Shown here piece after piece: positions 34,228 through 49,455 of a DNA stretch of 64,000 bases (positions are counted from its first letter, which is position 1; every line of letters starts with the position of its first letter). The translations under genes were made by a program, and so were the position numbers. Under the pieces are notes generated by a model, which was not told the DNA's origin, did no database searches, and was given only the letters and a program-made list of their open reading frames with translations. Where the stretch lies: IMG/VR virus record IMGVR_UViG_3300017917_003143, positions 279,633 through 343,632 of that record, one strand, 5' to 3'.

Positions 34228-37200
34228 ATGGCACTAGTTTCCCCAGGCGTAGAAGTTACAATCATTGACGAAAGTAACTACTTACCAGCCCCAACTAATT
34301 CAGTACCGTTTATCTTGATCGCGACAGCGCAGAACAAGATCAGCGGTAGCGGTGTAGGCGTAGCAGCCGGCACTACAGCGGCCAACGCTAACAGAGTTTA
34401 TTTAATCTCTTCACAGAGAGATTTGGTCAATACGTTTGGTAACCCATTCTTCTACAAGACCACAGCAGGTACACCAATCAATGGTTACGAGCTCAACGAA
34501 TATGGCTTGCTTGCCGCTTACTCAGTCTTGGGTATCAGCAATCGCGCTTACATTCAACGTGCCGACATTGACTTGAGTGAACTCACAGCTACTTTAACCC
34601 GTCCTACAGGCGAACCAAACAATGGTACTTACTGGTTAGATACTAGTTCTACTGCCTGGGGTATTTTTGAGTGGAGTTATACCACTTCAGCGTTCACACT
34701 CAAGACACCTATCGTCATCACTGACGAAAACGACCTTGATGGTGGGTTCCCGAAAGATTCTATCGGTAACATTGGTGACTATTGCGTCAATGCCTTGAAC
34801 ATCAACAACTATGGATATTTCAAGTCTCCAGGTTTGACAGTGACAGACTCTGGCGGTTCAGTTGAAATCGTTCCAGCCAATACTTGGGTATTGATTGGTA
34901 GCGACGACTGGAAAAATTCATGGCCTACAGTGATTGCCAACAACGCCAGCCCAGCATTGACCATTGGTCAATCAATCTTGCTCAATGGCAACATAGTCAC
35001 AGCCACAGGAACCACAGTCACACAATTTGCGATAGATATCAATGATGCAGGTATTCCTGGTGTGTATGCCAATGTAGTTGGTAACAAACTACAGATCTAT
35101 GTTGACGGTAACGGTACCAATGATTTGTCTACTGACGACGGCAACGGTATCCTTAGCATTGAAAACAACAGCGGTACTTTGTTGACTGCTCTAGGTATTA
35201 CAGCTACAGTTTACTATGCTCCTACCTTACAACAGAGTCCAAACTACACTGTTCCACAGTGGAGATCGACTAGTGCCGAACCACATCCAACTGGTTCTGT
35301 ATGGAATAAGATCAATAACGTAAACCAAGGTGCAGATCTTGTTGTTAAAAAGTACGACAGCACAGTAGGATTGTTTGTACAACAAAATTGCCCACTTTAT
35401 GCCAACGATCAAAGCGCAAACAAGGCTTTAGATCCAGCTGGTGGTGGTAGAAACATCACTGTTGGTACTACCTACGCTCAATACAATGTTGAAGTTCTTG
35501 ATGCACTAACTGGTGCCGCGACTTTCACAATGAAACTGTTTGAACGTGCAGCCACAGGCAACACTATCATCACAGGTAACACTACAACTCCTGTGTTTGT
35601 AAACGGTAATACTTTTGAAATATCTTGGAGCACTAAAAACAGCGATGTTTTAAGTGGACCAGTCACAGCTACCTTGGCTGGAACTGATGCCACAGCATTT
35701 GTCACAGCATTCTTGGCAGCAATTCCAAGTGGTGCACCTGTCACAGCTGGCGTAACATCAGACGGTGCAGTACAGATACAGCACACACAAGGCGGTGATG
35801 TGATTCTCAAAGATATCACAGGAACTCCAGTGGATGATGCCGGTATCACTACTTCGGTTGCAGGAGTACGTGCTGGCAAAGACAATGATTTGATCCTCAG
35901 CAACTGGGTCACATTGTTCCCAGATTATTTCCCACAAGGTGTAGCCCCTGATCAAGATCCAACTGATGGACGTCTATGGTACTACTCAGCCACAGATCAA
36001 GTTGACATCATGATCCAGAACAACGGTCAATGGGTTGGCTATCAGACAGTGAACTCAGATGTTCGTGGATTTGATCTAATGGCCACAGACCCTAATGGTC
36101 CAATTATTTCTGTGACTGCCCCAACTATAAACAGTGAGGGTAATCCTTTGGTTTATGGCGACCTGTGGATTGATACTTCTGATCTTGAAGCATATCCCAT
36201 CATCAAACGCTATCAATCAGTTGACGGACAAGACCAATGGGTATTGATTGACAACACCGATCAAACCACTGAAAATGGTGTGTTGTTTGCTGATTTCCGT
36301 TGGGCACCCAATGGATCAACAAATCCAATCACAGATCCAATTCCAACAATCAAGAGCTTGCTAAATTCAAGTTACCTTGATCCAGATGCTCCAACTTCTA
36401 CCTTGTATCCTGAAGGCATGTTAGGTTTCAACCTACGCCGTTCCGGATTCAATGTCAAGAGCTTCCAAGTTGATTACTTCAACACACGTGATTTCCCTGA
36501 CATGGATCCAATGGTTGTAACACAGACCAATGCTTGGGTCACAGCCAGCGGATTGCAAGACAACGGTGCTCCATACATGGGCCGTAAAGCAGTGCGCAAT
36601 CTTGTTGTACAGGCAATGAAGGCAAGTATTGATGGTAATCAAGATCTGCGCGAAGAACAACGCCAGTTCAACTTGATTGCTACACCTAACTATCCTGAGT
36701 TGATTCCTAACATGATAGCACTCAACAACGAGCGTAGCCAAACAGCATTCGTGGTTGGTGACACACCAATGCGCTTGCCTGACACAGCTGACGCGATCAC
36801 TGCTTGGGCAACCAATGCCAATGGTGTTGGACTCGATAGCGAAGATGGTTTGGTTACATCCGATCCGTACTTGGGCACATTCTACCCAAGCTGTGAAACC
36901 ACAGACTTGACAGGTTCCACAGTGGTACAACCACCGAGCCACATGATGTTGCGTACTATCCTGCGCAGTGACGAAGTGAGCTTCCCTTGGTTGGCACCAG
37001 CTGGTACACGTCGTGGTATCGTTGACAACGCATTTGCGTTGGGTTATGTAAATGCACAGACAGGACAGTTTGTTTCAACAGCTATCCGTCAAAGCATACG
37101 TGACACCTTGTATGAAAACAAGATCAATCCGATCACATTCATTCCAGGTGCTGGCATTACTAACTACGGTAACAAGACTGAAGCCGCTACACCAAGCGCA

Positions 37201-37545
37201 CTTGATCGTATCAACGTAGCACGATTGGTTTGCTTCATCCGTGCAAGACTTGAAAGCATTGGTAAGAGCTTTGTGTTTGAACCCAATGATCAGATCACAC
37301 GTGATGAGATCAGCAACGCTATCAGTAACTTGATGAACGACTTGGTTGCCAAGCGTGGTATCTATGATTACTTGGTTGTGTGTGATGATACTAACAATAC
37401 ACCGTCACGTATCGATCGCAACGAGCTTTGGGTCGATATTGCTATCGAGCCGGTTAAAGCAGTTGAATTCATCTACATACCAGTTCGAATCAAGAACACA
37501 GGTGAGATATCTTCCGGGCAGGTTGCGACATCAACTACCGTCTAA
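34228..37545 (+). CDS. gp18: Tail sheath protein (T4 gp18-like), enlarged
   Basis: MALVSPGVEVTIIDES N-terminus; FNLIATP.YPE, PWLAPAG..RG, LYENKINPI, ALDRINVARL, LWVDIAIEPVKAVEFIYIP C-terminus. Confidence 0.95.
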   Translation: MALVSPGVEVTIIDESNYLPAPTNSVPFILIATAQNKISGSGVGVAAGTTAANANRVYLISSQRDLVNTFGNPFFYKTTAGTPINGYELNEYGLLAAYSVLGISNRAYIQRADIDLSELTATLTRPTGEPNNGTYWLDTSSTAWGIFEWSYTTSAFTLKTPIVITDENDLDGGFPKDSIGNIGDYCVNALNINNYGYFKSPGLTVTDSGGSVEIVPANTWVLIGSDDWKNSWPTVIANNASPALTIGQSILLNGNIVTATGTTVTQFAIDINDAGIPGVYANVVGNKLQIYVDGNGTNDLSTDDGNGILSIENNSGTLLTALGITATVYYAPTLQQSPNYTVPQWRSTSAEPHPTGSVWNKINNVNQGADLVVKKYDSTVGLFVQQNCPLYANDQSANKALDPAGGGRNITVGTTYAQYNVEVLDALTGAATFTMKLFERAATGNTIITGNTTTPVFVNGNTFEISWSTKNSDVLSGPVTATLAGTDATAFVTAFLAAIPSGAPVTAGVTSDGAVQIQHTQGGDVILKDITGTPVDDAGITTSVAGVRAGKDNDLILSNWVTLFPDYFPQGVAPDQDPTDGRLWYYSATDQVDIMIQNNGQWVGYQTVNSDVRGFDLMATDPNGPIISVTAPTINSEGNPLVYGDLWIDTSDLEAYPIIKRYQSVDGQDQWVLIDNTDQTTENGVLFADFRWAPNGSTNPITDPIPTIKSLLNSSYLDPDAPTSTLYPEGMLGFNLRRSGFNVKSFQVDYFNTRDFPDMDPMVVTQTNAWVTASGLQDNGAPYMGRKAVRNLVVQAMKASIDGNQDLREEQRQFNLIATPNYPELIPNMIALNNERSQTAFVVGDTPMRLPDTADAITAWATNANGVGLDSEDGLVTSDPYLGTFYPSCETTDLTGSTVVQPPSHMMLRTILRSDEVSFPWLAPAGTRRGIVDNAFALGYVNAQTGQFVSTAIRQSIRDTLYENKINPITFIPGAGITNYGNKTEAATPSALDRINVARLVCFIRARLESIGKSFVFEPNDQITRDEISNAISNLMNDLVAKRGIYDYLVVCDDTNNTPSRIDRNELWVDIAIEPVKAVEFIYIPVRIKNTGEISSGQVATSTTV

Positions 37546-37562
37546 AGGTATCGCTAATGCAG

Positions 37563-37591
37563 AAAAATGGGGCTTAGGCCCCATTTTTTTT
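37563..37591 (+). terminator. Rho-independent terminator after sheath gene
   Basis: AAAAATGGGGC-TTAG-GCCCCATTTTTTTT. Confidence 0.9.
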
Positions 37592-37632
37592 GGTCTCATC
37601 TCAGATAAATAATTGCATAATAGGAGAATGAT

Positions 37633-38274
37633 ATGGCAGTCTCATCGTTAAACAAAATGACAGTGCCTTTGGCAAGTGATCAATCAAGTCCAACACAAGG
37701 CTTGCTCATGCCCAAGCTCAAGTATCGCTTCCGTGCGGTATTTGAAAATTTAGGTGTTAGTACACCAAGAACTGAATTGACCAAACAGGTTATGGATTTT
37801 ACACGTCCTTCGGTCAGTTTTGAAGAAATGGTCGTTGACATCTATAACAGTAAATTATATCTGGCTGGTAAACACAGCTGGGAAGCAATCGCAGTCAATT
37901 TGCGTGATGATGCAGGCGGTCAAGTTACCAAACTTATTGGCGAACAGCTACAGAAACAGCTAGACTTTGTTGAACAAGCGTCAGCGGCTGCTGGTATTGA
38001 CTACAAGTTTACAACACGTCTTGAGATCCTTGACGGAGGCAATGGTGCGGCAACTCCTGTAGTCCTTGAAACTTGGAAATTGTATGGTTGTTACTTGACA
38101 TCAGTCAACTACAACGATCTCAACTACGGTGAAAGTGCTCCAGTTACAATCACAATGAACATCCGATTTGACAACGCTGTTCAGACTCCAGAAGAAACTA
38201 GTGGAATTGGTATACAGGTTGGTAGTCAGTTTTCTAGATCTATCGATAGAGCAACTGGTCCAATAACAGGATAA
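37633..38274 (+). CDS. gp19: Tail tube protein (T4 gp19-like)
   Basis: PKLKYRFR, RPSVSF, LAGKHSW, ETWKLYGCYL..VNY.DLNY, I..NIRFDNA. Confidence 0.9.
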   Translation: MAVSSLNKMTVPLASDQSSPTQGLLMPKLKYRFRAVFENLGVSTPRTELTKQVMDFTRPSVSFEEMVVDIYNSKLYLAGKHSWEAIAVNLRDDAGGQVTKLIGEQLQKQLDFVEQASAAAGIDYKFTTRLEILDGGNGAATPVVLETWKLYGCYLTSVNYNDLNYGESAPVTITMNIRFDNAVQTPEETSGIGIQVGSQFSRSIDRATGPITG

Positions 38275-38279
38275 TAGTT

Positions 38280-39482
38280 ATGGCCTTTGGAGAGGACTTC
38301 CTCAAGGGGTTCTTTGGAAGTGACTATCTAAAGGACTACACACATGCCAGCAAAACTTTCCGCGCAGGTGGTTATGAGCTGGCTCCTCGTTATAAGTTTC
38401 TTTTTCACGTTTACTTCAATCTCAACACTGTTGAAATTCCAAAATTAAAAGAAGTATTTGCTCGAGCCGATCAGGACAACCTTGGTCTCTTGGTCAAAAC
38501 AGCACAGCTTCCTAATTATAACATTGAAGTTGATACTATGAATCAGTACAATCGTAAGAGACTGATTCAGAAAAAAATTGAATACAATCCATGCCAGATA
38601 TCGTTCCACGATGATGGATCAGATCTGGCAAGGAATCTTTGGTACAACTACTTTGCTTACTACTACAAAGACCCTACCCAACAATACTGGGGAGTACCTG
38701 TCACACAAGGCAGTCTTGGACAGAGTGGCAATGGTGGTGATCCAAAAATGAGTTACAATGGTAGAGATATCTACTCTACAGATCGCACAGTCAACGACTG
38801 GGGTTATATTGGCGAAAGCTACAGTGACGGCGCAGTGGGCGTGAGCGGAAAACCACCATTCTTTAGAGATATTACGATTTATGGTTTTGATCAAAATAAT
38901 TTCTGTGCTTATGTTCTAGTAAATCCAATGATCACCGAATGGCGCCATGATACATATGATTACAGCCAAGGTGGCGGATTGATGGAACATCAAATGACTT
39001 TGAGATACGAAACAGTAAAATATTATCAAGGCAAACTTGATGCCAACCGACCTACTGCCAACGCCAAAGGTTTTGCAGATCCTGCACGGTACGATACACA
39101 ACCCAGTCCGTTGCTTCGTGGTACAAAAGCCACTGTGCTTGGACCAGGTGGCTTGGTAGATACTGTAGGAGGTATAGTGAACGACTTACAAAGCGGATCA
39201 GTGTTGGGTATCATTGGTGCTGTACAAAAAGCAGGATCAGCATACCAAACATTCAAAGGAAAGAATTTGCAGAGTATTGTTCGTAACGAAGCCAATGCCG
39301 TGGTTAAAGATGTGATACGTGGACAACTACCAGGAGCAGTGAGACAAGTGGCCAATGCCGCTGATGGGTTCTTCTTCCCCAAGGTACCTACGCAGACTAA
39401 TCCAACTACCACTGCACCAGCCACACCAAGATCAGCCACACCGACCTTGCAAGGCCCGGCCACCCAGGACGTTCCAAGATGA
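38280..39482 (+). CDS. Tube-like baseplate-tube junction protein (gp54/gp48-like)
   Basis: VKTAQLP.Y......NQYNRKR..Q.KIEY.P..ISFHDD tube-type motifs; follows gp19. Confidence 0.6.
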   Translation: MAFGEDFLKGFFGSDYLKDYTHASKTFRAGGYELAPRYKFLFHVYFNLNTVEIPKLKEVFARADQDNLGLLVKTAQLPNYNIEVDTMNQYNRKRLIQKKIEYNPCQISFHDDGSDLARNLWYNYFAYYYKDPTQQYWGVPVTQGSLGQSGNGGDPKMSYNGRDIYSTDRTVNDWGYIGESYSDGAVGVSGKPPFFRDITIYGFDQNNFCAYVLVNPMITEWRHDTYDYSQGGGLMEHQMTLRYETVKYYQGKLDANRPTANAKGFADPARYDTQPSPLLRGTKATVLGPGGLVDTVGGIVNDLQSGSVLGIIGAVQKAGSAYQTFKGKNLQSIVRNEANAVVKDVIRGQLPGAVRQVANAADGFFFPKVPTQTNPTTTAPATPRSATPTLQGPATQDVPR

Positions 39483-39838
39483 GCACAGTCAATTACGTTG
39501 ATCCAAAATTGGATCCCACAGTCAGGGTATTTGATCAGTTTTATGATTTTGCTGTAGAAGTTCCAGCTGATCAATACGACGTGGTCTACAGTTATTTTAA
39601 AAAAGTTTTTTCAGACAATCTTGCCGCTAAAAATTTCACAGTCACTTTGTTCCAAGTGGCTGACTATCAAAAAAGACCAGTGTTAGAAGTGCTGGCAGAA
39701 ATACAAGGTCAGAGCCAACTACAGCTGACATCAACATTGTGTTACTATCTCAACAATCAACGCAGTAATTCTACCTTGTTGGGAGTCAATGCTTTGGTAC
39801 AACCCAACTACTATGCCGCACGTAATGTATTACCATGA
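39479..39838 (+). CDS. Hypothetical protein (119 aa)
   Basis: ATGA-coupled on both sides. Confidence 0.7.
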   Translation: MSTVNYVDPKLDPTVRVFDQFYDFAVEVPADQYDVVYSYFKKVFSDNLAAKNFTVTLFQVADYQKRPVLEVLAEIQGQSQLQLTSTLCYYLNNQRSNSTLLGVNALVQPNYYAARNVLP

Positions 39839-40269
39839 GCAGGAACTATGCACAGGGATTCTTTGAAGTAGCGAATCCAAAAAAATATCTTGGCAAGGGC
39901 AAGCCCAAATACCGATCAGGTTGGGAACATGCCTTCATGCGTTTTTGCGACAACAATGATGCCATAGTGGGCTGGGCCAGCGAAAGCATTTCTATACCCT
40001 ATCGTAATCCACTGACAGGCAAGATGACCAACTACATTCCGGATTTCTTGATACAGTATCGCACTCGTACCAACGAAGTAAAAACCGAACTGATTGAAAT
40101 CAAACCCAAAAAGCAAAGCATTTTAGAAAGCAAGATGAGCGTGAGAGATCGTGCCATTGTTGCTGTAAACTATGCCAAATGGGACGCCGCAACCAAATGG
40201 TGTCGCCGGCAAGGGCTAACATTCCGTGTGATTACCGAAGACGATATCTTCCGCAACGGCAAGAAATAA
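39835..40269 (+). CDS. Head completion nuclease (T4 gp4-like, PD-(D/E)xK)
   Basis: YRSGWE..FM.FCD, WASE...IPY, Y.PDF, LIEIKP, VN.AKW.AA..WC. Confidence 0.85.
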   Translation: MSRNYAQGFFEVANPKKYLGKGKPKYRSGWEHAFMRFCDNNDAIVGWASESISIPYRNPLTGKMTNYIPDFLIQYRTRTNEVKTELIEIKPKKQSILESKMSVRDRAIVAVNYAKWDAATKWCRRQGLTFRVITEDDIFRNGKK

Positions 40270-40285
40270 TGCGGTAAATACCCGC

Positions 40286-40783
40286 ATGACTAAGAAATTA
40301 GAAGAACTGTTTGATCTACCTCGCAAAGAGGACGCCCAGGGCACAGACGATCCTGAGGATTCACACCCAGGCAACGATGTTGAAACCAATCTTCCAGTAT
40401 TGCCCGAAGCCTTGGCAGCACTGGACAAGATAGAGTCTGCTCTGCCAGCTGTGCGTGGCCTAGAAGCATCTGATCAGGAAATGGATGATCTCGCCAAAAA
40501 AGCCACTGAAAGTTTTGACAACCTCATGGACTTGGGCATGCAAGTAGACAGCCGTTATGCCAGCGAAATCTTTGCAGTGGCAGGTGCCATGTTAGGGCAT
40601 GCGATCACAGCCAAAACAGCCAAACTAAACAAAAAGCTCAAAATGATCGATCTACAGCTCAAAAAAGCCAAGCTCGATCAAGACAACGACGAACCCTCTG
40701 TGTCCACCGGTACCGGTGTGCTGTTGGATCGCAATGAAATACTGGAACGCTTGAGCAAGCGCGAACAACCAAAGAAGCCTTGA
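40286..40783 (+). CDS. Putative terminase small subunit (gp16-like)
   Basis: 165 aa helical protein ending KL..LQ...DRNEILERL; weak resemblance only. Confidence 0.45.
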   Translation: MTKKLEELFDLPRKEDAQGTDDPEDSHPGNDVETNLPVLPEALAALDKIESALPAVRGLEASDQEMDDLAKKATESFDNLMDLGMQVDSRYASEIFAVAGAMLGHAITAKTAKLNKKLKMIDLQLKKAKLDQDNDEPSVSTGTGVLLDRNEILERLSKREQPKKP

Positions 40784-40811
40784 TAGGCTAAATATGATAT
40801 AGGGGATTGAT

Positions 40812-41414
40812 ATGAAAACTTTTGCAGAATACTTAACAGAATCCAAGCACACATACGATTATCGTATTAAAATAGCAGGGGATATTCCTCCTGATTTTAT
40901 GAGCGGGTTCAAAGAAAAGCTCAAGCAATTTGACGTGGTGTCAATGAGCGCACCTAAGAAAACACCGGTGCAAAAACAGTTGTCTGATTTTCCTCAGTAC
41001 AACAATGAAAGCATGACTTTCATGGATGTTACTTTTAACTATCCAGCAACACCGCCACAGATCACACAGATCGCTCAGTTATTGGGCCTTGATCCTAACC
41101 GTATCATCATGCAAGATTCTAAGTATGCTGACAGTATTGATCAAGAACGTGCCAAACAAGATGCAGAGAGCAAAAACTTGCTGACTGACACAGATTATCC
41201 AGCTCCTGACAAAGAACAAAAAGCACTATCCAAAGACTACGCAGTCGGCCCCTACGATCATGCTGTGGTCAAGAATGCTTACAAGAGTGATTTCACCGTG
41301 GCAGGAGGCAAGACTCCGCCTGCAGTGAGTTCCAATGATTTCCCAATGGGACAAAAGAGTCCAGTTGGAACAACTAAAAATAAATTGCCAGCTGTACACA
41401 GCAACGCCAGATAA
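40812..41414 (+). CDS. Putative internal head protein
   Basis: Starts MKTFAEYLTE, like the T4 capsid-targeting sequence MKTYQEFIAE. Confidence 0.55.
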   Translation: MKTFAEYLTESKHTYDYRIKIAGDIPPDFMSGFKEKLKQFDVVSMSAPKKTPVQKQLSDFPQYNNESMTFMDVTFNYPATPPQITQIAQLLGLDPNRIIMQDSKYADSIDQERAKQDAESKNLLTDTDYPAPDKEQKALSKDYAVGPYDHAVVKNAYKSDFTVAGGKTPPAVSSNDFPMGQKSPVGTTKNKLPAVHSNAR

Positions 41415-41425
41415 GGAAAAAACAA

Positions 41426-43066
41426 ATGAATAACATGTATGACATACTCGGTAAAATGAATTTGCTGGAAGGCAAAGGTAGCAAACCTGACTTCCTTGAT
41501 CTGGACAAAGATGGCAACAAAAAAGAACCAATGAAGTCAGCGGCCAAGGAAGTTGATGAAGCATCATATTCTGCCAAAGCCGCTCGTGCTGGCAAAGACA
41601 TTGGCAAGCCAGGCAAAGCATTTGCACAGATAGCTGCCAAAGCTGGCAAGGCCTATGGTAGCAAAGAGCGTGGCGAGAAAGTTGCTGGTGCTGTGTTGGC
41701 CAAACTCCGTGCCAAAGAAGATGTGGCACAAGAAGGCAACAAGTTCACAGGCAATCTAGCCAAGGCTCGTGCCGCAGGCAAAAAAGTAGCAGACCTTGAT
41801 GGTGACGGAGACATGGAGCCAGTGCGCGAAGGTAATCTTGAAGAACTTGACATGAAGTTGCTCAAAGGACTACAAGGTGCAATGAGCAAGAATCAAAAGG
41901 ATCCAGAGAGCGAGCGCAACATCCACAAGAAATATGGATACCGCAGTGATCGTGACGAGACATCAGACGACGACTATGATGAGCACGGCAATCTCAAAGA
42001 CAAGAAAAAAGCCAAGCACAAAGATGATGGTCCTAAGAAAAAAGGACGCCCCAAAGGTTCAGGCCGTAAACTTGGAGCCAAAGGTCCTACAGGCAAGAGC
42101 AAATTGCTCCGTATGAAAGAAGACGAAACACAGTTGGTAGACAAAGGCGAATACGATCGCGAAGGCGACATGGCCAAAGAGCAGTTGCACACTATCGAAG
42201 CCGCTGCCAAAGAATTACACAGTATCCTTGGCGATGATCAGAACTTGCCAGAATGGGTGCAATCAAAGATTACCAAGGCCATGGACTACATTGACACAGC
42301 ACGTGACTATATGTTGAGCCAAAGGCACGATCAAGAAGAAATGCCTGTGGCTGAAAAGGCTGTGAGCAAAGCACAACAACGTTTCATGGGCATGGCACAT
42401 GCCATGCAAAAGGGCGAAAAGATTCCTGGCGCCAGCAAGGAATTAAAGCAAGTAGCCAAGACCATGAAGAAGGGTGACGTAGAAGATTTTGCTAAAACCA
42501 AACACTCAGGTCTTCCTGAAAAGAAAAAGAAGGAAGAAGAAGTCGAAGAAACCACAGTGGCTGGTAGCGTAGCACCTGCACCTGCTGGCGGAAAAGGAAA
42601 AAAAGGTATGGTATTTGGCAAGGGAGTATATGAAAACAAGATCGCTGAGAGCTTTGACAAGAAATTAGGCGAAGTGCTCAACGAAGGCATGAGCATCAAT
42701 ATGAGCATGGGCGAAGACGGACAGAAAAGCCTTACAGTCAACGCCACAGATGACGATGCTGTAAAACTTGCGCAGATTCTCAAATTGGCTGGCATGGGTT
42801 CAAGCCATGGTTACCAAGACGCATGCCCTGCATGTGGACAGCAAGATTGTGGTTGTGAACAGATGGACGAAGCACAAGATGATTTGGCCAATTCTCCTGA
42901 TGAAGAAACAGAAACAACAGAATACATGACCAAAACGATCGCCGGCGGCTTGAACAAGAACAAGGTAACAGGAATGACTACAATACCTGTGGTGCCTACC
43001 CAGCAAGTCACTGAAGCTGAGATTGAAAAAGATCTCATGAATCTTTACAAACAGTTTAAAGCATAA
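41426..43066 (+). CDS. K/E-rich putative internal head (poly)protein
   Basis: 546 aa low-complexity modules separated by hydrophobic-X-E sites. Confidence 0.5.
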   Translation: MNNMYDILGKMNLLEGKGSKPDFLDLDKDGNKKEPMKSAAKEVDEASYSAKAARAGKDIGKPGKAFAQIAAKAGKAYGSKERGEKVAGAVLAKLRAKEDVAQEGNKFTGNLAKARAAGKKVADLDGDGDMEPVREGNLEELDMKLLKGLQGAMSKNQKDPESERNIHKKYGYRSDRDETSDDDYDEHGNLKDKKKAKHKDDGPKKKGRPKGSGRKLGAKGPTGKSKLLRMKEDETQLVDKGEYDREGDMAKEQLHTIEAAAKELHSILGDDQNLPEWVQSKITKAMDYIDTARDYMLSQRHDQEEMPVAEKAVSKAQQRFMGMAHAMQKGEKIPGASKELKQVAKTMKKGDVEDFAKTKHSGLPEKKKKEEEVEETTVAGSVAPAPAGGKGKKGMVFGKGVYENKIAESFDKKLGEVLNEGMSINMSMGEDGQKSLTVNATDDDAVKLAQILKLAGMGSSHGYQDACPACGQQDCGCEQMDEAQDDLANSPDEETETTEYMTKTIAGGLNKNKVTGMTTIPVVPTQQVTEAEIEKDLMNLYKQFKA

Positions 43067-43740
43067 TGAAAACACTGCGCGAATACATCACTGAATCAGA
43101 ACAATGGATGGATAACCCAGCCGTTGGTGATGACTTTGCGATCAACATCAAAGAAGATTGTTTGATTGAAAGCCATATCATCGCAGTAGAAGAAGATAGA
43201 CTCTGCATCGAAGCTGATGAAAAATTGATGGCCATATTAGAAAGTTATGGATATCAATTAGAAGACAAGTGTTCTGTCTGCGGGCACGAAGCCTGCACCT
43301 GCGAAGATCTTGATGAAATGATGAGCGTGGACGATGTGTTGGTCAGTGAAGATCCCACAGAAGAAGAGCCAATGACTCCTGGTCGTGATGATCCAGATGG
43401 TACTACAGCCGATGATCCAATCGGCGAAGATTCTGGCGAAGAAGATGGCATGCCATTGGATATCGACGAAGCTGAATATCAAGGTCGCAAAGTGCCCTTG
43501 GGTAAGCCCATGCGTGGTGATGTCAAGAAGTTCAAAGTTTATGTGCGTGATCCCAGCACTGGCAATGTAAAAAAAGTCAACTTTGGCCACGGTGGTACAT
43601 CGGCTAAACGTCTTGGTCAGAAGACCATGAAGATCAAAAAATCAAATCCTGCACGTCGTAGATCATTCCGTGCTCGCCACAACTGCGACAATCCAGGACC
43701 AAGAACCAAAGCAAGATATTGGTCTTGCCGTGCGTGGTAA
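43066..43740 (+). CDS. Putative internal head protein with basic C-terminal domain
   Basis: Starts MKTLREYITE; acidic middle; basic KKFKVYV...VKKVNFG...RARHNCD...KARYWSC end. Confidence 0.55.
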   Translation: MKTLREYITESEQWMDNPAVGDDFAINIKEDCLIESHIIAVEEDRLCIEADEKLMAILESYGYQLEDKCSVCGHEACTCEDLDEMMSVDDVLVSEDPTEEEPMTPGRDDPDGTTADDPIGEDSGEEDGMPLDIDEAEYQGRKVPLGKPMRGDVKKFKVYVRDPSTGNVKKVNFGHGGTSAKRLGQKTMKIKKSNPARRRSFRARHNCDNPGPRTKARYWSCRAW

Positions 43741-43755
43741 ACAAGGAAAATAAAA

Positions 43756-44034
43756 ATGGCCGCAAACGTATACACATCATTGGCTAATGCCACAGTCTAT
43801 ACAGATAAACTACAGATAATTACTACTTCAAACGCTGTAACATACCAGGTTTATGCTACAGCACTGGGCTCTGCTCCAGCAGTTGGTAATATTTACAGCG
43901 AACCTATTAACATTCCAGCCCATACCGTGTTTGAAGTATATGCCGGTGCCGGTAACAAAGTTACTGTGGCTGGTTCTAATTGGACAGCACTTGAATTAGG
44001 GACAGCGAGTTCAGCACAAGAAAGCGTGTTCTAA
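43756..44034 (+). CDS. Hypothetical protein (92 aa)
   Basis: SD AAGGA; beta-rich composition. Confidence 0.7.
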   Translation: MAANVYTSLANATVYTDKLQIITTSNAVTYQVYATALGSAPAVGNIYSEPINIPAHTVFEVYAGAGNKVTVAGSNWTALELGTASSAQESVF

Positions 44035-44035
44035 A

Positions 44036-44449
44036 ATGAGAGCACGAGAGTTTGTCACAGAAGACGCTGGATTCAACGGGTTTGATCACGACGAGTCTAC
44101 CGGTCGTCGACGTCCTACTAAAAAACACCAAAAAGGTCATCCTGACAATTGGTACGTAGCTACCAGTCCGGGTGCCATGCGTATTGACAACCTTGACAAG
44201 TATTATGATCTATATCGTATGAGTATGATCATGGCTGGCGGCCCCACAGATGACGTAGCTGATGAAGAATCTTACATAGCCAACAGTCCTGTGTTGAGTG
44301 GGTATACTGATGAGGATGATGAAAAAATTAAGTACGCTGCCAAACGCATGGGCGGAGTGATCAGAGATATTGCACCACCTGGCAGCCGCGAACCTCAAGA
44401 TACACAGAAACAGAGTCCAATCAAAGCATTCAAAGGTTACCCAAAATGA
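44036..44449 (+). CDS. Putative internal head protein, paralog 1
   Basis: MRAREFVTE...SPIKAFKGYPK. Confidence 0.6.
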   Translation: MRAREFVTEDAGFNGFDHDESTGRRRPTKKHQKGHPDNWYVATSPGAMRIDNLDKYYDLYRMSMIMAGGPTDDVADEESYIANSPVLSGYTDEDDEKIKYAAKRMGGVIRDIAPPGSREPQDTQKQSPIKAFKGYPK

Positions 44450-44832
44450 GAGCACGTGAGTTTATCACCGAACAAGAAAATCTTGCACCTGAGCAAGCCG
44501 CTCCCATGCGACAAACTTATGTGATTCCTGGACTCAGCGCCGCGGATCCTTACAAAAATTATAGATTTGGTGTGGCCATAGCACGAGCCAGATCTGATCA
44601 AACACCCGATGACATCAACCCACACCGACCCGAGTGGTCAAAAGAAACACCATTTGGTGAGCATGGTGTGGTAGTGGGCATGAATGCAGGAATCAAACCT
44701 GTGATTGATGCCGCACTGAAGATGACAGGTACCCCAGGTGGCAAACGAATAGTATCAACTCCAGCCAGCGACGAGCCAGAGTTCGTGGAAAAAATCAGTC
44801 CAATCAAACCCTTTAAAGGATATCCACGGTAA
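44446..44832 (+). CDS. Putative internal head protein, paralog 2
   Basis: MRAREFITE...SPIKPFKGYPR. Confidence 0.6.
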   Translation: MRAREFITEQENLAPEQAAPMRQTYVIPGLSAADPYKNYRFGVAIARARSDQTPDDINPHRPEWSKETPFGEHGVVVGMNAGIKPVIDAALKMTGTPGGKRIVSTPASDEPEFVEKISPIKPFKGYPR

Positions 44833-46439
44833 TGGCCACGCCAAATCCCTCAGAAGTAGCACCATGGTATCTGCGTAACATAACGCAGGCCCTGGAACTG
44901 GACGAAGCCACAGGCAATGTATTTGTCCGTACCAATGCGGCCATACTTGGCAATGTATCAGTGGGTAATGTATCTATTGGCGCATTAGGCAACATTGACC
45001 TAACAGGTAACACCATGCCGGTGTCTGTTATAGGCGATGTCACAGTTCTACAAGGCACCAATCCTTGGGTAGTCACTGGCAACACAAATGTAGCTATCAC
45101 ATCGGGCAATGTAGGCATCACAGGCAATGTCAACGTCACACAAGGTACAACACCTTGGACAGTGTCCGGCAATGTGGGGATCTCAGGCACAGCCAATGTT
45201 GTGTTGGCCGAAGATGCCAATGTAGTCATCTCAGGATTCAGCGGTGCTGTGTCAGATGCGTTTGGCCGACTGCGTGTGAGCGAACCTTACACCCTGTTTG
45301 ACACACAGGCTCGTTATTTTGATCATCAACAGTTTGCCAGCAACGTCACAGGCACTGGCAACGTTGTTTACGTACAAAATCAAAGCTCGTATCAACTCAA
45401 TGTGGGTTCAGCATCAGGCGACAGCGTACTAAGAGAAACCTTAAAAGCATTTCCTTATCAACCAGGCAAGAGTCAACTTACATTAAACACATTCTGTTTT
45501 AACACACCCAAGACCAATCTGCGCCAGCGTGTGGGATTGTTTGATGCTGACAACGGTGTGTTCTTTGAAAACGATGGAGAATACAACTACTTTGTGATCA
45601 GATCAGGCTCCACAGGAGTAGAAGAGCGTGTGCGTCAAGACGCCTGGAACGGCAATCAACTGCTTGGAGTAGTCAACACCAATAATCCCTCAGGTATAAA
45701 TCTATATCCTGATCGTACCCAGATCATGTTTGCTGACGTAGAGTGGTTGGGTGTGGGTTCGGTGCGTGTAGGATTTGTGATCAACGGTGCTTATGTCATC
45801 TGTCACACATTTAATCATGCTAACCAACCAGGCAATACAAAAGTCTACATGACCACGGCTACCTTGCCCATACGCTATGAGATAACCAACACTGGTGCTA
45901 CTACTGGTGCCAGCATGATGACACAGATATGTAGCTCGGTGATTTCTGAAGGGGGATTCCAGTTAGCAGGATCAGGTAATCCTCGTGCGGCCTCGCATGT
46001 TATAGGTACTCCGGTTCGATTGCCCAACGATCAGAGTTTTAAACCAGTGCTGTCAATCAGATTAAAGAGCACCAACTTAGATGCCGTGGTCATTCCTATC
46101 AACTATTCTTTGGTTCCTGTTGCACAGAGTTTATTCCAATACCGAATCTATAAAAAAGCTGTCACATCAGGCGGCTCATGGGTCAGTTCAGCCGCAGACA
46201 GTTCAGTGGAATACAATCTTGCACCTACCGCATTGGTATCTGGAGATATAGCGGAACAAACTTTTCTAAACTCCAGTAACCAAAGTAGTCAAGCACCTAC
46301 ACAGACATCATTTACATTCGTATATCAATTGGAGCGAGAGCCATTTACAGGCGTAGCATATGAATATGTGATCATGGCTGCCACCACAGGTACTAATCAA
46401 GACGTTTACGCCAGCATTGAATGGCAGGAGATTACATAA
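44832..46439 (+). CDS. Probable virion structural protein
   Basis: 535 aa; GNV repeats at N-terminus, DAFGRLRVSEPYTLFD motif, beta-sandwich-like composition. Confidence 0.6.
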   Translation: MATPNPSEVAPWYLRNITQALELDEATGNVFVRTNAAILGNVSVGNVSIGALGNIDLTGNTMPVSVIGDVTVLQGTNPWVVTGNTNVAITSGNVGITGNVNVTQGTTPWTVSGNVGISGTANVVLAEDANVVISGFSGAVSDAFGRLRVSEPYTLFDTQARYFDHQQFASNVTGTGNVVYVQNQSSYQLNVGSASGDSVLRETLKAFPYQPGKSQLTLNTFCFNTPKTNLRQRVGLFDADNGVFFENDGEYNYFVIRSGSTGVEERVRQDAWNGNQLLGVVNTNNPSGINLYPDRTQIMFADVEWLGVGSVRVGFVINGAYVICHTFNHANQPGNTKVYMTTATLPIRYEITNTGATTGASMMTQICSSVISEGGFQLAGSGNPRAASHVIGTPVRLPNDQSFKPVLSIRLKSTNLDAVVIPINYSLVPVAQSLFQYRIYKKAVTSGGSWVSSAADSSVEYNLAPTALVSGDIAEQTFLNSSNQSSQAPTQTSFTFVYQLEREPFTGVAYEYVIMAATTGTNQDVYASIEWQEIT

Positions 46440-47143
46440 TGAAAAAACTATTAGCCATTCTACTATTTGTACCCGTGGCAGTATGGGCACAAATCAATCA
46501 ACAATGTCCACAGTTTACCAGTCACGGCACACCTGCTTATCAAGCACAGCCAGGTGATCAAGAACTGTGTAAAACAAACTATGCTGTCATCCATCGTTGT
46601 TCAGTCAAAGCACCTGTGGCAGTGTTTGAACATTTGACAGTGGCCGCAATGACAGGTCCTGCCAAACGTAAAGACAACTTCCGACCAGATCCTGCTGTAC
46701 ATCCAGAATGTCAAGCTACCTTGGCCGACTATGCCACAGTGGGCCGCACACACGATCGCGGACACATGGCTCCGGCGGCTAACAACACACAAAATGATCA
46801 GATCATGAGCGAAAGCTTCTTCTTATCAAACATGGTAGCACAAGTGGCCAACAACAATCGTGGTATCTGGAAACAGTTGGAAACTTGGGAACGTGACTGG
46901 GCCATGAAAGGCGGAGACTTCTACATCATCTCCGGTGGTATCTTTGATCAAGGTCATCCAGTGACAGGCAATGGATTGGGCATACCCACACGCCTTTACA
47001 AAGTCATACACGAAAAAGCATCAGGACAGACCATGGCATATCTCATGCCCAATGCTCCACTACCTGTTGCAGATTTACCTAAGTATCAAGTTCCACTGGA
47101 AGCAGTAGAACAAGCCACAGGCTTCCGTTTTCCTTTTAGATGA
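46439..47143 (+). CDS. Non-specific DNA/RNA endonuclease (NucA/Serratia family) with signal peptide
   Basis: Start ATG 46439 (TAATG coupling); MKKLLAILLFVPVAVWA signal; DRGHMAP, ESFFLSNM.AQ...NRGIWKQLE. Confidence 0.9.
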   Translation: MKKLLAILLFVPVAVWAQINQQCPQFTSHGTPAYQAQPGDQELCKTNYAVIHRCSVKAPVAVFEHLTVAAMTGPAKRKDNFRPDPAVHPECQATLADYATVGRTHDRGHMAPAANNTQNDQIMSESFFLSNMVAQVANNNRGIWKQLETWERDWAMKGGDFYIISGGIFDQGHPVTGNGLGIPTRLYKVIHEKASGQTMAYLMPNAPLPVADLPKYQVPLEAVEQATGFRFPFR

Positions 47144-47343
47144 CCGCAGAAGAACTACAGAGACTCGCTGGTATAGGAGTTTATCGACCATATAACCTGC
47201 CTCCAACGGCAGGTTCTAACATCAGCATCACTGGCAATGAAAAAGGCGAGCTGATGAAAAAACACAACATCCAGCCAGGCACACCTGAGTGGTTCCAGTT
47301 ATGGTTCAGTAAGCCTTACTTGACTGGTGAGCATCCTCTTTGA
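47140..47343 (+). CDS. Small hypothetical protein (67 aa)
   Basis: ATGA-coupled; ELQRLAGI motif. Confidence 0.65.
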   Translation: MTAEELQRLAGIGVYRPYNLPPTAGSNISITGNEKGELMKKHNIQPGTPEWFQLWFSKPYLTGEHPL

Positions 47344-47851
47344 GACCCAAGTAAAGATTCCAGCTGGGGTGCCGTACACCGCGATAGGTGCTTTTCACAG
47401 AGTTGACCAAGGCCCAGTAGTTAGGCTTTACAGGAGCTTTGTTTGGCCTCCAGATCTTGTTGCCTTTTTCTGAGTTACACTCTTTACAGGCAGTGACACA
47501 GTTTTCCCACGTAGTGGTTCCGCCTTGTGCTCGAGGTAGCACATGATCGATGGTGAGTTCACGGCCGTTGAATGTTTCGTCGCAGTATTGGCAAGTGAAT
47601 AGATCTCGTAGATAAAGATTCTGCCTGCTGAATCGCATGCCGCCATTTTTGCCAAAACCTCGCTTGGTCACGGCCACAGCAGGGACTCGCATCTCCAGCT
47701 TGGCGCTTCGTACGACCCAATCATCATACCATTCTAACACTTGGATTTTGTCCAAGAAGAATAGTTTAACCGCTGTTTGCCAATCAATTGTGCTGAGTGG
47801 CAAGTAATTGACCGGTTGGTAGTCCGGTGCTAATATAAGGGTATCACTCAT
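47306..47851 (-). CDS. HNH endonuclease (McrA-like)
   Basis: RDLFTCQYC...LTIDHVLPRAQGG...WENCVTACKECNSEKG. Confidence 0.92.
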   Translation of the reverse strand: MSDTLILAPDYQPVNYLPLSTIDWQTAVKLFFLDKIQVLEWYDDWVVRSAKLEMRVPAVAVTKRGFGKNGGMRFSRQNLYLRDLFTCQYCDETFNGRELTIDHVLPRAQGGTTTWENCVTACKECNSEKGNKIWRPNKAPVKPNYWALVNSVKSTYRGVRHPSWNLYLGLKEDAHQSSKAY

Positions 47852-47889
47852 AAGAATATTTATATGCTAACATTTTGGTAAGTAATACT

Positions 47890-49455
47890 ATGTCAAAGAG
47901 TTTAGAAGGTGTATTAGTCAAGGCTCCTCATCGGCGCCAACCCTACACTGAACAACAAATCGAAGAATTCGTGAAATGTGCAGACCCTATCACAGGTCCT
48001 CATTATTTCATGTCAAACTTCTTTTTCATCCAACATCCTTTGCATGGCAAGATGTTGTACCAGCCCTATGAATTCCAAGACAGGCTGATAGAAACATATC
48101 ACAATTATAGATTCTCTATCAGCATGATGCCACGACAAACGGGCAAATCGACCTCGGCTGCTGGCTATCTTTTATGGTACGCTATGTTTGTACCAGACTC
48201 GACAATTTTGGTCGCGGCGCACAAGTATTTAGGCGCACAAGAAATTATGCAACGTGTACGATATGCTTATGAAGCCTGTCCAGATCATATCCGTGCTGGT
48301 GTGACATCGTACAATAAAGGATCTATAGAATTTGATAACGGTAGTCGTATTGTAGCACAAACTACTACTGAAAATACCGGTCGTGGTATGTCTATCACAC
48401 TCCTGTACTGTGACGAGTTTGCATTTGTAAGACCTACCATAGCCAAAGAGTTTTGGACTTCTATCACTCCTACATTGTCAACTGGTGGTAAGGCGATCAT
48501 TACATCAACACCAAACTCAGACGAAGATCAGTTTGCCTTGATCTGGAAGCTGGCCAACAAGCTGGAGGATGACTATGGCAACCCAACAGAGATAGGCCAA
48601 AACGGATTCCGTGCGTTCCGTGCGTTTTGGAGAGAGCACCCAGATCGTGACGAAAATTGGGCAAAACAACAAAGAGCAATACTGGGTGAAGAACGATTCC
48701 GTCGAGAGATGGACTGCGAATTCATCATCGATGATGAAACATTGATAGCACCTACCAAACTAGTTGATCTGACATCAAGAGACCCATTGTATAAAACAGG
48801 ACAGGTGCGCTGGTTCCAGAACCCACAACCTGATCGATTCTATGTAGTAGCGTTAGACCCCAGTCTGGGCACCGGCGGCGACCCTGCTGCCATACAAGTG
48901 TTTGATGCCAACACCACCGAGCAAATAGCCGAATGGAGGCACAACAGGACCACGATACCTGAACAGGTACGTATCCTGGCAGATATCTGCAAACACATCA
49001 ACGAAAAGATCAAAGATTCAAAGAGTATCTACTACAGCATAGAAAACAACACCATTGGCGAAGCCGCACTGATATCTATAGCAGAGTACGGCGAAGAAAA
49101 CATACAGGGCTATTTCCTCAGCGAATCAGGTGGCACCAGCGGGCGTAGATATCGTAAAGGATTTAACACTACTAACAAGCCCAAGCTGGCAGCTTGTGCC
49201 AAGATGAAAAATCTGATAGAAACAGGGCGCATGAAAATACACTCAGCCAGCTTAGTCACTGAGCTTAAAAACTTTATCGCATCGGGCGCTGGATATGCCG
49301 CAAAAGCTGGAGAAACTGATGATTTAGTGATGGCTACTATACTTGCAGTGCGCATGATGCAACTGTTGCAGAGCTATCACACTGAACTGGACACGCAATT
49401 ACGAGATCACAGCGACACGGTCATAGAACCCATGCCATTCATAGCAGCCTTCTAA
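47890..49455 (+). CDS. gp17: Terminase large subunit (T4 gp17-like)
   Basis: PRQTGKS Walker A, LLYCDEFAF Walker B, ITSTPN, ALDPSLG, DDLVMA nuclease motifs; likely start ATG 47890. Confidence 0.96.
   Translation: MSKSLEGVLVKAPHRRQPYTEQQIEEFVKCADPITGPHYFMSNFFFIQHPLHGKMLYQPYEFQDRLIETYHNYRFSISMMPRQTGKSTSAAGYLLWYAMFVPDSTILVAAHKYLGAQEIMQRVRYAYEACPDHIRAGVTSYNKGSIEFDNGSRIVAQTTTENTGRGMSITLLYCDEFAFVRPTIAKEFWTSITPTLSTGGKAIITSTPNSDEDQFALIWKLANKLEDDYGNPTEIGQNGFRAFRAFWREHPDRDENWAKQQRAILGEERFRREMDCEFIIDDETLIAPTKLVDLTSRDPLYKTGQVRWFQNPQPDRFYVVALDPSLGTGGDPAAIQVFDANTTEQIAEWRHNRTTIPEQVRILADICKHINEKIKDSKSIYYSIENNTIGEAALISIAEYGEENIQGYFLSESGGTSGRRYRKGFNTTNKPKLAACAKMKNLIETGRMKIHSASLVTELKNFIASGAGYAAKAGETDDLVMATILAVRMMQLLQSYHTELDTQLRDHSDTVIEPMPFIAAF

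What the first reader, a model, noticed from the sequence alone, without database searches (positions are those of the whole stretch)
46439..47143. Secreted non-specific nuclease in the late region
Seen: a classical Sec-type signal (MKKLLAILLFVPVAVWA/Q), an intact DRGH motif and two Cys near the N-terminus; the gene is translationally coupled to structural genes upstream of gp17. Knowledge: NucA/Serratia-type enzymes degrade DNA and RNA, and export protects cytoplasmic nucleic acid. Inference: possible roles are periplasmic superinfection exclusion, clearing extracellular DNA or biofilm at lysis, or nucleotide scavenging.
Basis: partly seen in the sequence, partly recalled or inferred. Interest (0 to 1): 0.6.

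Follow-up and report, generated by a model that had tools for sequence, protein, structure and literature searches.

The report
Secreted non-specific nuclease of a jumbo phage
The gene is real and encodes an exported DNA/RNA-cutting enzyme of a well-known family; similar genes are already annotated in other giant phages, so it is an ordinary find whose benefit to the phage is still untested.

Summary
Window 46439-47143 (+) is a 234-aa ORF. It matches Pfam Endonuclease_NS (132 bits against a cut-off of 23). With an alignment it folds confidently (pLDDT 95) into the EndoG/EXOG/Anabaena NucA fold (TM 0.77-0.79).

The catalytic core is invariant or nearly so in 144 distant relatives: DRGH 106-109, N131, N140, E148. 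The first 17 residues form a classical cleavable Sec signal. In all 58 full-length phage relatives its sequence drifts, but it stays hydrophobic and always has Ala at -1. There are four conserved Cys, not two. The mature enzyme is under strong purifying selection (dN/dS 0.03-0.15).

The genome is a 343.6-kb metagenomic jumbo phage from a pond sample. The gene ends a gap-free 13-kb run of tail and head genes. In dozens of related contigs it lies upstream of the large terminase, with a variable junction between them.

Homologues with signal peptides are already annotated in phages K64-1/RaK2, RP13, YerA41 and Phosso. I therefore rate it a new member of a known kind.

The biological role is unresolved. 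I favour storage in the periplasm and action at lysis. Superinfection breakdown remains possible. Nucleotide scavenging found no supporting genes.

The parts
46439..47143 (+). Nuclease gene, 234 aa precursor (P0001), Endonuclease_NS family
   Evidence: ORF and translation; Pfam PF01223 at 132 bits; AF2 pLDDT 95; Foldseek EndoG/EXOG/NucA TM 0.77-0.79
46439..46489 (+). Predicted Sec signal peptide, residues 1-17, with the cleavage site after VWA
   Evidence: Hydrophobicity profile; low pLDDT at the N-terminus; 58 relatives keep the n/h/c layout and Ala at -1 while the core sequence varies; pN 0.30 against 0.15 in the mature part
46490..47140 (+). Mature nuclease domain, residues 18-234, with Cys23/Cys44 and Cys54/Cys91
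   Evidence: Invariant Cys in the clade; Cys23 and Cys44 occur together in 112 of 144 distant relatives and are both absent in 22; dN/dS 0.03-0.15
46754..46765 (+). DRGH motif (D106 R107 G108 H109), holding the catalytic His
   Evidence: Read directly; aligned to the RGH of EXOG, whose H140A mutant structures are among the fold-search matches; H109 kept in 141 of 144 relatives
46426..46430 (+). AGGAG ribosome-binding site, 8 nt before the ATG, inside the end of the upstream gene
   Evidence: present only in relatives that share the same upstream gene
44832..46439 (+). Upstream 535-aa virion structural protein; its stop overlaps the nuclease start
   Evidence: phrog_1645 E=3e-105; cyanophage virion-protein homologues; variable or absent at this position in relatives
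47140..47343 (+). 67-aa ORF coupled to the nuclease by an ATGA overlap; function unknown
   Evidence: homologues directly after the nuclease in 5 related loci only; no family or phage hits
47306..47851 (-). HNH endonuclease gene inserted antisense between the nuclease and the terminase; probably a homing endonuclease
   Evidence: PF01844/PF14279; present only in the closest relatives L008-L012; other mobile endonucleases occupy the same junction elsewhere
47875..49455 (+). Large terminase (T4 gp17 type), the conserved downstream neighbour
   Evidence: Terminase_6N/6C; 53% identity to PA5oct-type phages; downstream of the nuclease in most related loci

Best explanation
The gene encodes a pre-protein whose 17-residue Sec signal peptide takes it across the inner membrane of a diderm host. 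Signal peptidase I cuts after VWA. Two disulfides then form in the periplasm (Cys23-Cys44 and Cys54-Cys91). The mature 217-residue enzyme is a Mg2+-dependent beta-beta-alpha-metal nuclease of the Serratia NucA/EndoG type that cuts DNA and RNA without sequence preference. His109 acts as general base, and Asn140 and Glu148 hold the metal. The gene is made together with tail and head genes. Export keeps the enzyme away from replicating and packaging phage DNA. It can therefore act only on nucleic acid that reaches the periplasm, or on the nucleic acid spilled when the cell lyses. I think the most likely benefit is digestion of host and unpackaged nucleic acid at lysis, so that virions are not trapped; packaged genomes are protected by the capsid. 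The family, fold, catalytic residues and signal-peptide features are shown computationally. Export, disulfides, activity, timing and benefit are inferred. The confidence given is for the molecular account. The lysis-time role alone I put at about 0.4.
For: Family and fold. Catalytic core invariant or nearly so in 144 distant relatives. The signal peptide keeps its character in 58 relatives, with Ala at -1 in all and a small or aliphatic residue at -3, while its amino-acid sequence changes about twice as fast as the mature part. Nearly all distant relatives also start with a signal-like N-terminus. Cys23 and Cys44 co-vary across the family, and Cys54 and Cys91 form a clade-specific pair. Strong purifying selection. 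The host is diderm, because the phage itself encodes Porin_4 and a CsgG lipoprotein. From 34228 to 47343 the genes are packed with overlaps or gaps of at most 87 nt and include tail sheath, tail tube and head-closure genes. No intrinsic terminator stands before the gene. The gene keeps its place upstream of the terminase across a lineage whose TerL is 70-91% identical. A second secreted degradative enzyme, a subtilase, is encoded elsewhere in the genome.
Against: No export or activity measurement exists. No signal-peptide predictor was available, so only heuristics and conservation were used. Timing is inferred from packing only: the T4 late-promoter word is not enriched, and the YerA41 homologue is a middle gene. 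In other jumbo phages the homologue sits among small early-looking genes or tRNAs. Nothing in the sequence singles out lysis-time clearing over the rival roles.
Confidence: 0.8

Rival explanations
1. Periplasmic breakdown of incoming DNA. The enzyme would destroy the DNA of superinfecting phages, or transforming DNA, that is exposed in the periplasm. It would be a phage-borne stand-in for the host endonuclease I that degrades excluded T-even DNA.
For: The predicted periplasmic location. T4-type phages are known to use periplasmic proteins against superinfection, such as Spackle and RI sensing periplasmic DNA (abstracts: PMC7650644, PMC8385771). The Campylobacter CJIE4 prophage nucA is a distant homologue, and the abstract of PMC3995785 lists resistance to DNA transformation among known C. 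jejuni prophage effects. That the nucleases are the cause I know from memory only.
Against: Placement at the end of a virion-gene run suggests late synthesis, which is poor timing for exclusion. No Imm- or Sp-like partner was identified. PADLOC has no match. Injected DNA is normally shielded from the periplasm.
Confidence: 0.2
2. Nutrient scavenging. The enzyme would digest environmental DNA and RNA to feed nucleotides or phosphate into replication of the 343-kb genome.
For: The phage also encodes a porin and a TctC-type periplasmic binding protein. It comes from a pond sample.
Against: The phage has no PstS, 5'-nucleotidase or alkaline phosphatase. Polymeric DNA does not cross the outer membrane. 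Placement with virion genes suggests synthesis after most DNA replication.
Confidence: 0.1
3. Virion-associated nuclease. The protein would travel with the particle and act at the next infection.
For: The gene lies among virion and packaging genes. The YerA41 homologue (210 aa, with a signal peptide) was detected by mass spectrometry in purified particles.
Against: A cleavable signal peptide and disulfides place it outside the cytoplasm, where heads and tails assemble. The YerA41 particle list also contains ligase, helicases, topoisomerases and polymerases, which suggests carry-over.
Confidence: 0.05
4. Partner of the phage's envelope module (CsgF, CsgG, curlin-repeat protein, FecR-domain protein, CHASE2 protein). 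The enzyme would trim extracellular DNA associated with a curli-like matrix.
For: In one related large-phage contig (L005) a 42-45% identical secreted nuclease lies inside that module in one tightly packed gene run. The same module exists in this genome at 42-50 kb.
Against: Here the two are about 280 kb apart. Four other relatives show no such linkage. A folded, disulfide-bonded 24-kDa protein would not pass the roughly 13-15 Angstrom CsgG channel (dimensions from PMC9004378).
Confidence: 0.05
5. The hydrophobic N-terminus is not a working signal, and the enzyme is a cytoplasmic degrader of host DNA.
For: None beyond the lack of experimental data on export.
Against: The n/h/c layout and the -3/-1 rule hold in 58 of 58 relatives. 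The Cys pairs co-vary. A non-specific nuclease in the cytoplasm would attack the phage's own DNA, and no inhibitor was found (though that search had no positive control).
Confidence: 0.03

Closest known systems
Serratia marcescens extracellular nuclease NucA (PDB 1SMN/1G8T), founding member of PF01223
   Same: Signal peptide, DRGH active site, beta-beta-alpha-metal fold, disulfide-bonded secreted enzyme. The His/Asn/Glu core is conserved (residue equivalences to Serratia H89, N119 and E127 are from my own knowledge of that enzyme).
   Different: Only a distant sequence match (E=8e-11). The cysteines are at other positions. It is a chromosomal bacterial gene, and the enzyme is released to the medium.
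Anabaena NucA with its inhibitor NuiA (PDB 1ZM8, 2O3B)
   Same: TM 0.78-0.79 over about 225 columns. It is a secreted, sugar-non-specific nuclease.
   Different: No NuiA-like gene was detected in the phage (that search had no positive control). 26-27% identity.
Mitochondrial EndoG and EXOG
   Same: Best sequence and structure matches (E about 1e-24; TM 0.74-0.77). The RGH...LSN...NN.G.W..E core aligns residue for residue.
   Different: They are eukaryotic, with a mitochondrial targeting sequence in place of a Sec signal. EXOG carries an extra C-terminal domain. About 30% identity.
Jumbo-phage homologues: Klebsiella phage K64-1/RaK2 'periplasmic DNA/RNA non-specific endonuclease', Ralstonia phage RP13 ORF241, Yersinia phage YerA41 gp018, Sinorhizobium phage Phosso
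   Same: Same family, similar length, and a signal-like N-terminus in RP13 and YerA41. All are from large lytic phages of diderm hosts.
   Different: 30-40% identity. They lie among small non-structural genes or tRNAs, not next to the terminase. The YerA41 gene is of the middle class. None has a tested role that I could find.
Prophage nucleases with a tested or proposed role: Campylobacter CJIE4 NucA and Streptococcus pyogenes Spd1
   Same: Phage-borne, exported, non-specific beta-beta-alpha-metal nucleases (PMC3258162 abstract).
   Different: They are carried by temperate elements and serve the lysogen: block of transformation, or escape from neutrophil DNA traps. Identity to CJIE4 NucA is 25%.
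E. coli endonuclease I (EndA), PF04231
   Same: A periplasmic non-specific DNase. It is the functional analogue for breakdown of excluded phage DNA (my own knowledge).
   Different: An unrelated family, and host-encoded.

Membership tests
Endonuclease_NS (PF01223; Serratia NucA/EndoG type) | Profile score above the curated cut-off | tested here: met
   132.1 bits against a cut-off of 23, covering profile positions 11-216 of 223
Endonuclease_NS (PF01223; Serratia NucA/EndoG type) | DRGH motif with the catalytic His | tested here: met
   D106-R107-G108-H109. In 144 relatives G108 is kept in 144 and H109 in 141.
Endonuclease_NS (PF01223; Serratia NucA/EndoG type) | Metal-binding Asn and the Glu of the N..G.W...E segment | tested here: met
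   N140, W144 and E148 are each kept in 143 of 144 relatives, and N131 in 144 of 144. They align with EXOG.
Endonuclease_NS (PF01223; Serratia NucA/EndoG type) | Beta-beta-alpha-metal fold on a central sheet | tested here: met
   Predicted model with pLDDT 95 and pTM 0.90. EndoG, EXOG, NucA and CPS-6 match at TM 0.74-0.79 with probability 1.00. This is a prediction, not a solved structure.
Endonuclease_NS (PF01223; Serratia NucA/EndoG type) | Mg2+-dependent cleavage of DNA and RNA | not testable with these tools
   Needs the purified protein
Sec-exported, signal peptidase I-cleaved protein | Positive n-region, 7-15-residue hydrophobic core, small residues at -3 and -1 | tested here: met
   MKK, a 13-residue core, then V-W-A|Q. 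All 58 relatives keep the layout with Ala at -1. No dedicated predictor was available.
Sec-exported, signal peptidase I-cleaved protein | Not a lipoprotein or Tat signal | tested here: met
   No Cys at +1 and no RR motif
Sec-exported, signal peptidase I-cleaved protein | Actual translocation and cleavage | not testable with these tools
   Needs fusion or fractionation experiments
Nuclease-inhibitor pair (NucA/NuiA type) | A cognate inhibitor gene in the genome | tested here: inconclusive
   No PF07924 match in the genome, but the control genomes did not ring either. The coupled 67-aa ORF has no known family and is absent from most relatives.
Late (virion-module) gene | Co-transcription with structural genes | tested here: inconclusive
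   A gap-free run from the tail sheath gene to this gene with no terminator before it. No late-promoter signal was found and no RNA data exist.

The most novel reading that the evidence does not exclude
The nuclease could be a fixed, lineage-wide part of a phage-encoded envelope tool-kit. It would work in the periplasm with other exported phage proteins (porin, CsgGF/curlin module, subtilase). It would act either as a phage-owned system that destroys competitors' DNA in the periplasm, or to dismantle a DNA-containing matrix. If so, giant phages would use a secreted nuclease as an extracellular or periplasmic weapon, which has not been shown experimentally for any lytic phage.
Probability: 0.12. 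Interest if true: 0.6.

Novelty: new member of a known kind. Interest (0 to 1): 0.3.

Why it matters
Exported non-specific nucleases recur in large phages of diderm bacteria. In this widespread freshwater lineage the gene is a conserved, strongly constrained neighbour of the terminase gene. Even so, I found no lytic phage in which anyone has tested what such an enzyme does for the phage. A cultured relative (RP13, YerA41, RaK2/K64-1) would make the question answerable. In practice, the protein is a compact, disulfide-stabilised, secretion-ready relative of the Serratia nuclease. The finding itself is an annotation, not a new mechanism.

Tried and rejected
- Folding without an alignment gave a useless model (pLDDT 45), so I repeated it with 64 sequences.
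- Megablast of the region against the phage collection found nothing.
- The broad alignment A2 was too diverse for the genome scan. The narrower A3 worked. It showed that the best cellular matches reach only 47% identity, so there is no recent host donor and no host clue.
- The T4 late-promoter word TATAAATA is not enriched: 3 found against 1.8 expected.
- The run search returned only DNA runs, from a pond metagenome. Read laying could therefore say nothing about expression and was not used.
- NuiA was not found, but that search had no positive control.
- There is no second Endonuclease_NS copy in the genome.
- PstS, 5'-nucleotidase and alkaline phosphatase are absent.
- T4-type small terminase PF11053 was not found, again without a positive control.
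- NCBIfam and PADLOC have no match for the nuclease.
- The 67-aa ORF and the p128 paralogue have no hits in cultured phages.
- The idea that the nuclease stands in for the small terminase, because it occupies the gp16 position, was rejected. Its signal peptide, disulfides and EndoG fold all argue against it.
- Linkage to the CsgG module was seen in one relative only and not in four others.
- Complex prediction was not used, because I do not claim that the 67-aa ORF binds the nuclease.

Full report
**What is there**

Window 46439-47143 on the + strand is an open frame of 234 codons.
- Its ATG shares a base with the TAA of the upstream 535-aa gene (TAATG).
- AGGAG sits 8 nt upstream, at 46426-46430.
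- An in-frame ATG 18 nt further upstream lies inside the preceding gene. No relative uses it: all 58 full-length relatives start at the MK(K) position.
- The gene's G+C (47%) is close to that of the genome (45%).

**Family and fold**

The protein matches Pfam Endonuclease_NS at 132 bits against a cut-off of 23. It also matches PHROG 14168 'nuclease'.

Against solved structures the best sequence matches are human EXOG and mouse EndoG (E about 1e-24). Anabaena NucA and the Serratia nuclease follow.

A single-sequence fold failed. With a 64-sequence alignment AlphaFold2 gave pLDDT 95 and pTM 0.90, and only the first ~20 residues had low confidence. Foldseek then returned EndoG, EXOG, NucA, Drosophila EndoG and CPS-6 at TM 0.74-0.79. 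In the viral library it returned phage and giant-virus 'DNA/RNA non-specific endonucleases'.

Conservation across 144 representatives at or below 50% identity:

| Residue | Kept in |
|---|---|
| G108 | 144 |
| N131 | 144 |
| H109 | 141 |
| Q135, N140, W144, E148 | 143 each |
| R77 | 140 |
| D106 | 136 |

By my knowledge of the Serratia enzyme these are the general base (His), the Mg2+ ligand (Asn) and the Glu of the active site. The enzyme therefore looks intact.

**Export signal**

Residues 1-17 have two lysines, a 13-residue hydrophobic core containing Pro12, and V-W-A before Gln18. There is no twin-arginine motif and no lipobox. No dedicated predictor was available, so I used evolution as the test.
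- In 58 full-length relatives from IMG/VR contigs the core sequence changes freely but stays hydrophobic.
- Position -1 is always Ala and position -3 is small or aliphatic.
- The mature N-terminus (QI..QCPQF) is almost fixed.
- Non-synonymous divergence is about twice as high in the signal peptide as in the mature part (median pN 0.30 against 0.15). This is the usual behaviour of signal peptides.
- Nearly all distant relatives also begin with a signal-like segment.

**Cysteines**

The protein has four Cys (23, 44, 54, 91), all invariant in the clade.

Across the wider family, Cys23 and Cys44 are both present in 112 of 144 sequences and both absent in 22. That pattern fits a disulfide. Cys54 and Cys91 form a clade-specific pair.

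A disulfide-bonded enzyme fits the periplasm. The host must be diderm, because the phage itself encodes a Porin_4 porin and a CsgG lipoprotein.

**Selection and distribution**

dN/dS of the mature part is 0.03-0.15 against relatives. Synonymous sites are near saturation even at 92% protein identity.

The 5.8-billion-protein search gave more than 1,700 hits. The top 120 are 80-92% identical and come from many metagenomes. Several lie on contigs of 272-343 kb.

Outside this clade the nearest relatives are 39-47% identical. Wherever I could see their context they lie on phage-like contigs, and Ralstonia phage RP13 is among them. The best matches in cellular genomes are at most 47% identical and taxonomically scattered. 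The gene is therefore a long-standing phage gene, not a recent capture from a host.

**Genome and neighbourhood**

The window is the last 64 kb of a 343,632-bp single-contig virus record, 99% complete by CheckV. Its DNA is held by a pond metagenome. Its large terminase is T4-type and 53% identical to that of Pseudomonas phage PA5oct.

From the tail sheath gene (34228) through tail tube, head closure and further genes to the nuclease and the 67-aa ORF, all genes are on the + strand. They overlap or are separated by at most 87 nt, and no terminator precedes the nuclease. Co-transcription with virion genes is therefore likely, but it is an inference:
- the T4 late-promoter word is not enriched;
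- no RNA run holds the region.

In 71 related loci the nuclease lies upstream of the terminase and the following 464-aa protein wherever those genes are visible. The upstream neighbour varies: the 535-aa structural protein is often diverged or absent. The nuclease-terminase junction is a hot spot. It holds nothing in many loci, the antisense HNH gene only in the closest relatives, and elsewhere a radical-SAM/SPASM protein or NUMOD3 and LAGLIDADG endonucleases.

**What is known**

Homologues are already annotated:
- in Klebsiella phages K64-1/RaK2 as 'periplasmic DNA/RNA non-specific endonuclease';
- in RP13, YerA41, Phosso, XaC1 and Flavobacterium phages;
- in Campylobacter CJIE4 prophages.

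In those phages the gene sits among small non-structural genes or tRNAs.

The YerA41 homologue has its own signal peptide. By RNA-seq it is a middle gene, and it was detected in purified particles (PMC7354516). That particle list also includes ligase, helicases and topoisomerases, so carry-over is likely.

My literature searches found no functional test of such an enzyme in a lytic phage. Prophage nucleases with known or proposed roles include Spd1 (PMC3258162). For Campylobacter prophages, resistance to DNA transformation is reported (PMC3995785).

**Mechanism and role**

I am confident (about 0.8-0.9) of the molecular account. The protein is exported by Sec, cleaved by signal peptidase I and folded oxidatively. 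It is a Mg2+-dependent non-specific nuclease kept away from cytoplasmic phage DNA.

| Role | My estimate | Main points |
|---|---|---|
| Storage in the periplasm and action when lysis mixes compartments, clearing host and unpackaged nucleic acid around capsid-protected progeny | about 0.4 | Fits the placement with virion genes and the presence of a second secreted hydrolase, a subtilase |
| Breakdown of superinfecting or transforming DNA in the periplasm | about 0.2 | Live rival; timing looks poor |
| Nutrient scavenging | about 0.1 | No PstS, 5'-nucleotidase or alkaline phosphatase |
| Virion association | about 0.05 | Conflicts with a cleavable signal peptide and disulfides |
| Link to the CsgG module | about 0.05 | Seen in one relative only |

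**Verdict**

The gene is a new member of a known kind, and I score its interest at 0.3.

Noticed in passing
Outside the window: genome G000:C1 42112-50500 (locus L079 9113-14451; L084): The phage carries an envelope module: CsgF, CsgG fused to an SH3 domain, a protein with a curlin repeat, a secreted FecR-domain protein, a 664-aa secreted protein and a CHASE2-domain ORF. Phage CsgGF pores are known from pelagimyophages and methylophage Melnitz, but those were reported to lack fibre subunits (PMC9004378). A curlin-repeat gene next to them may therefore be new. The same module occurs in contig L005 with a secreted nuclease inside it.
   Followed up: partly
Outside the window: genome G000:C1 33750-34547, 160101-162005, 193580-194479, 209433-210620, 212018-212914: Further predicted exported proteins: an SPFH/Band-7 lipoprotein, a 634-aa subtilase S8, a TctC-type periplasmic binding protein, a Porin_4 outer-membrane porin and a 298-aa protein with no family match. 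This is a sizeable phage-encoded envelope secretome.
   Followed up: partly
window 47306-47851 (-), and the equivalent junction in L008-L078: An HNH endonuclease gene lies antisense between the nuclease and the terminase, and only in the closest relatives. Other relatives carry a radical-SAM/SPASM protein of about 375 aa, NUMOD3 or LAGLIDADG endonucleases, or nothing at the same junction. The junction is a hot spot for mobile endonucleases next to the terminase gene.
   Followed up: partly
window 47140-47343 (+): A 67-aa ORF overlaps the nuclease stop (ATGA). Its 3' end is overlapped by the antisense HNH gene. Homologues (53-59% identity) follow the nuclease directly in five related loci only. 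There is no family or cultured-phage match. An inhibitor role is conceivable but untested.
   Followed up: partly
window 44036-44449 and 44446-44832 (+): Two adjacent paralogous small proteins (137 and 128 aa) share the N-terminal MRAREF.TE and a C-terminal SPIK.FKGYP(K/R). They are conserved upstream of the nuclease in most relatives, sometimes abutting it directly. They have no family or cultured-phage match.
   Followed up: no
window 44832-46439 (+): The 535-aa protein upstream of the nuclease is 44-46% identical over its C-terminal 395 residues to 'virion structural proteins' of T4-like cyanophages such as S-RIM8 and S-SRM01. It is highly variable or missing at this position in related phages, as would be expected of a host-recognition or decoration protein.
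   Followed up: no
window 47875-49455 and whole genome: No T4-type small terminase (PF11053) was detected anywhere in the genome, and the gp16 position upstream of the large terminase is taken by the nuclease. That search had no positive control, so the small terminase is simply unidentified.
   Followed up: partly
window 41426-43066 (+): A 546-aa ORF in the virion-gene run contains a DUF3008 segment (residues 312-367) that matches several PHROGs of unknown function.
   Followed up: no
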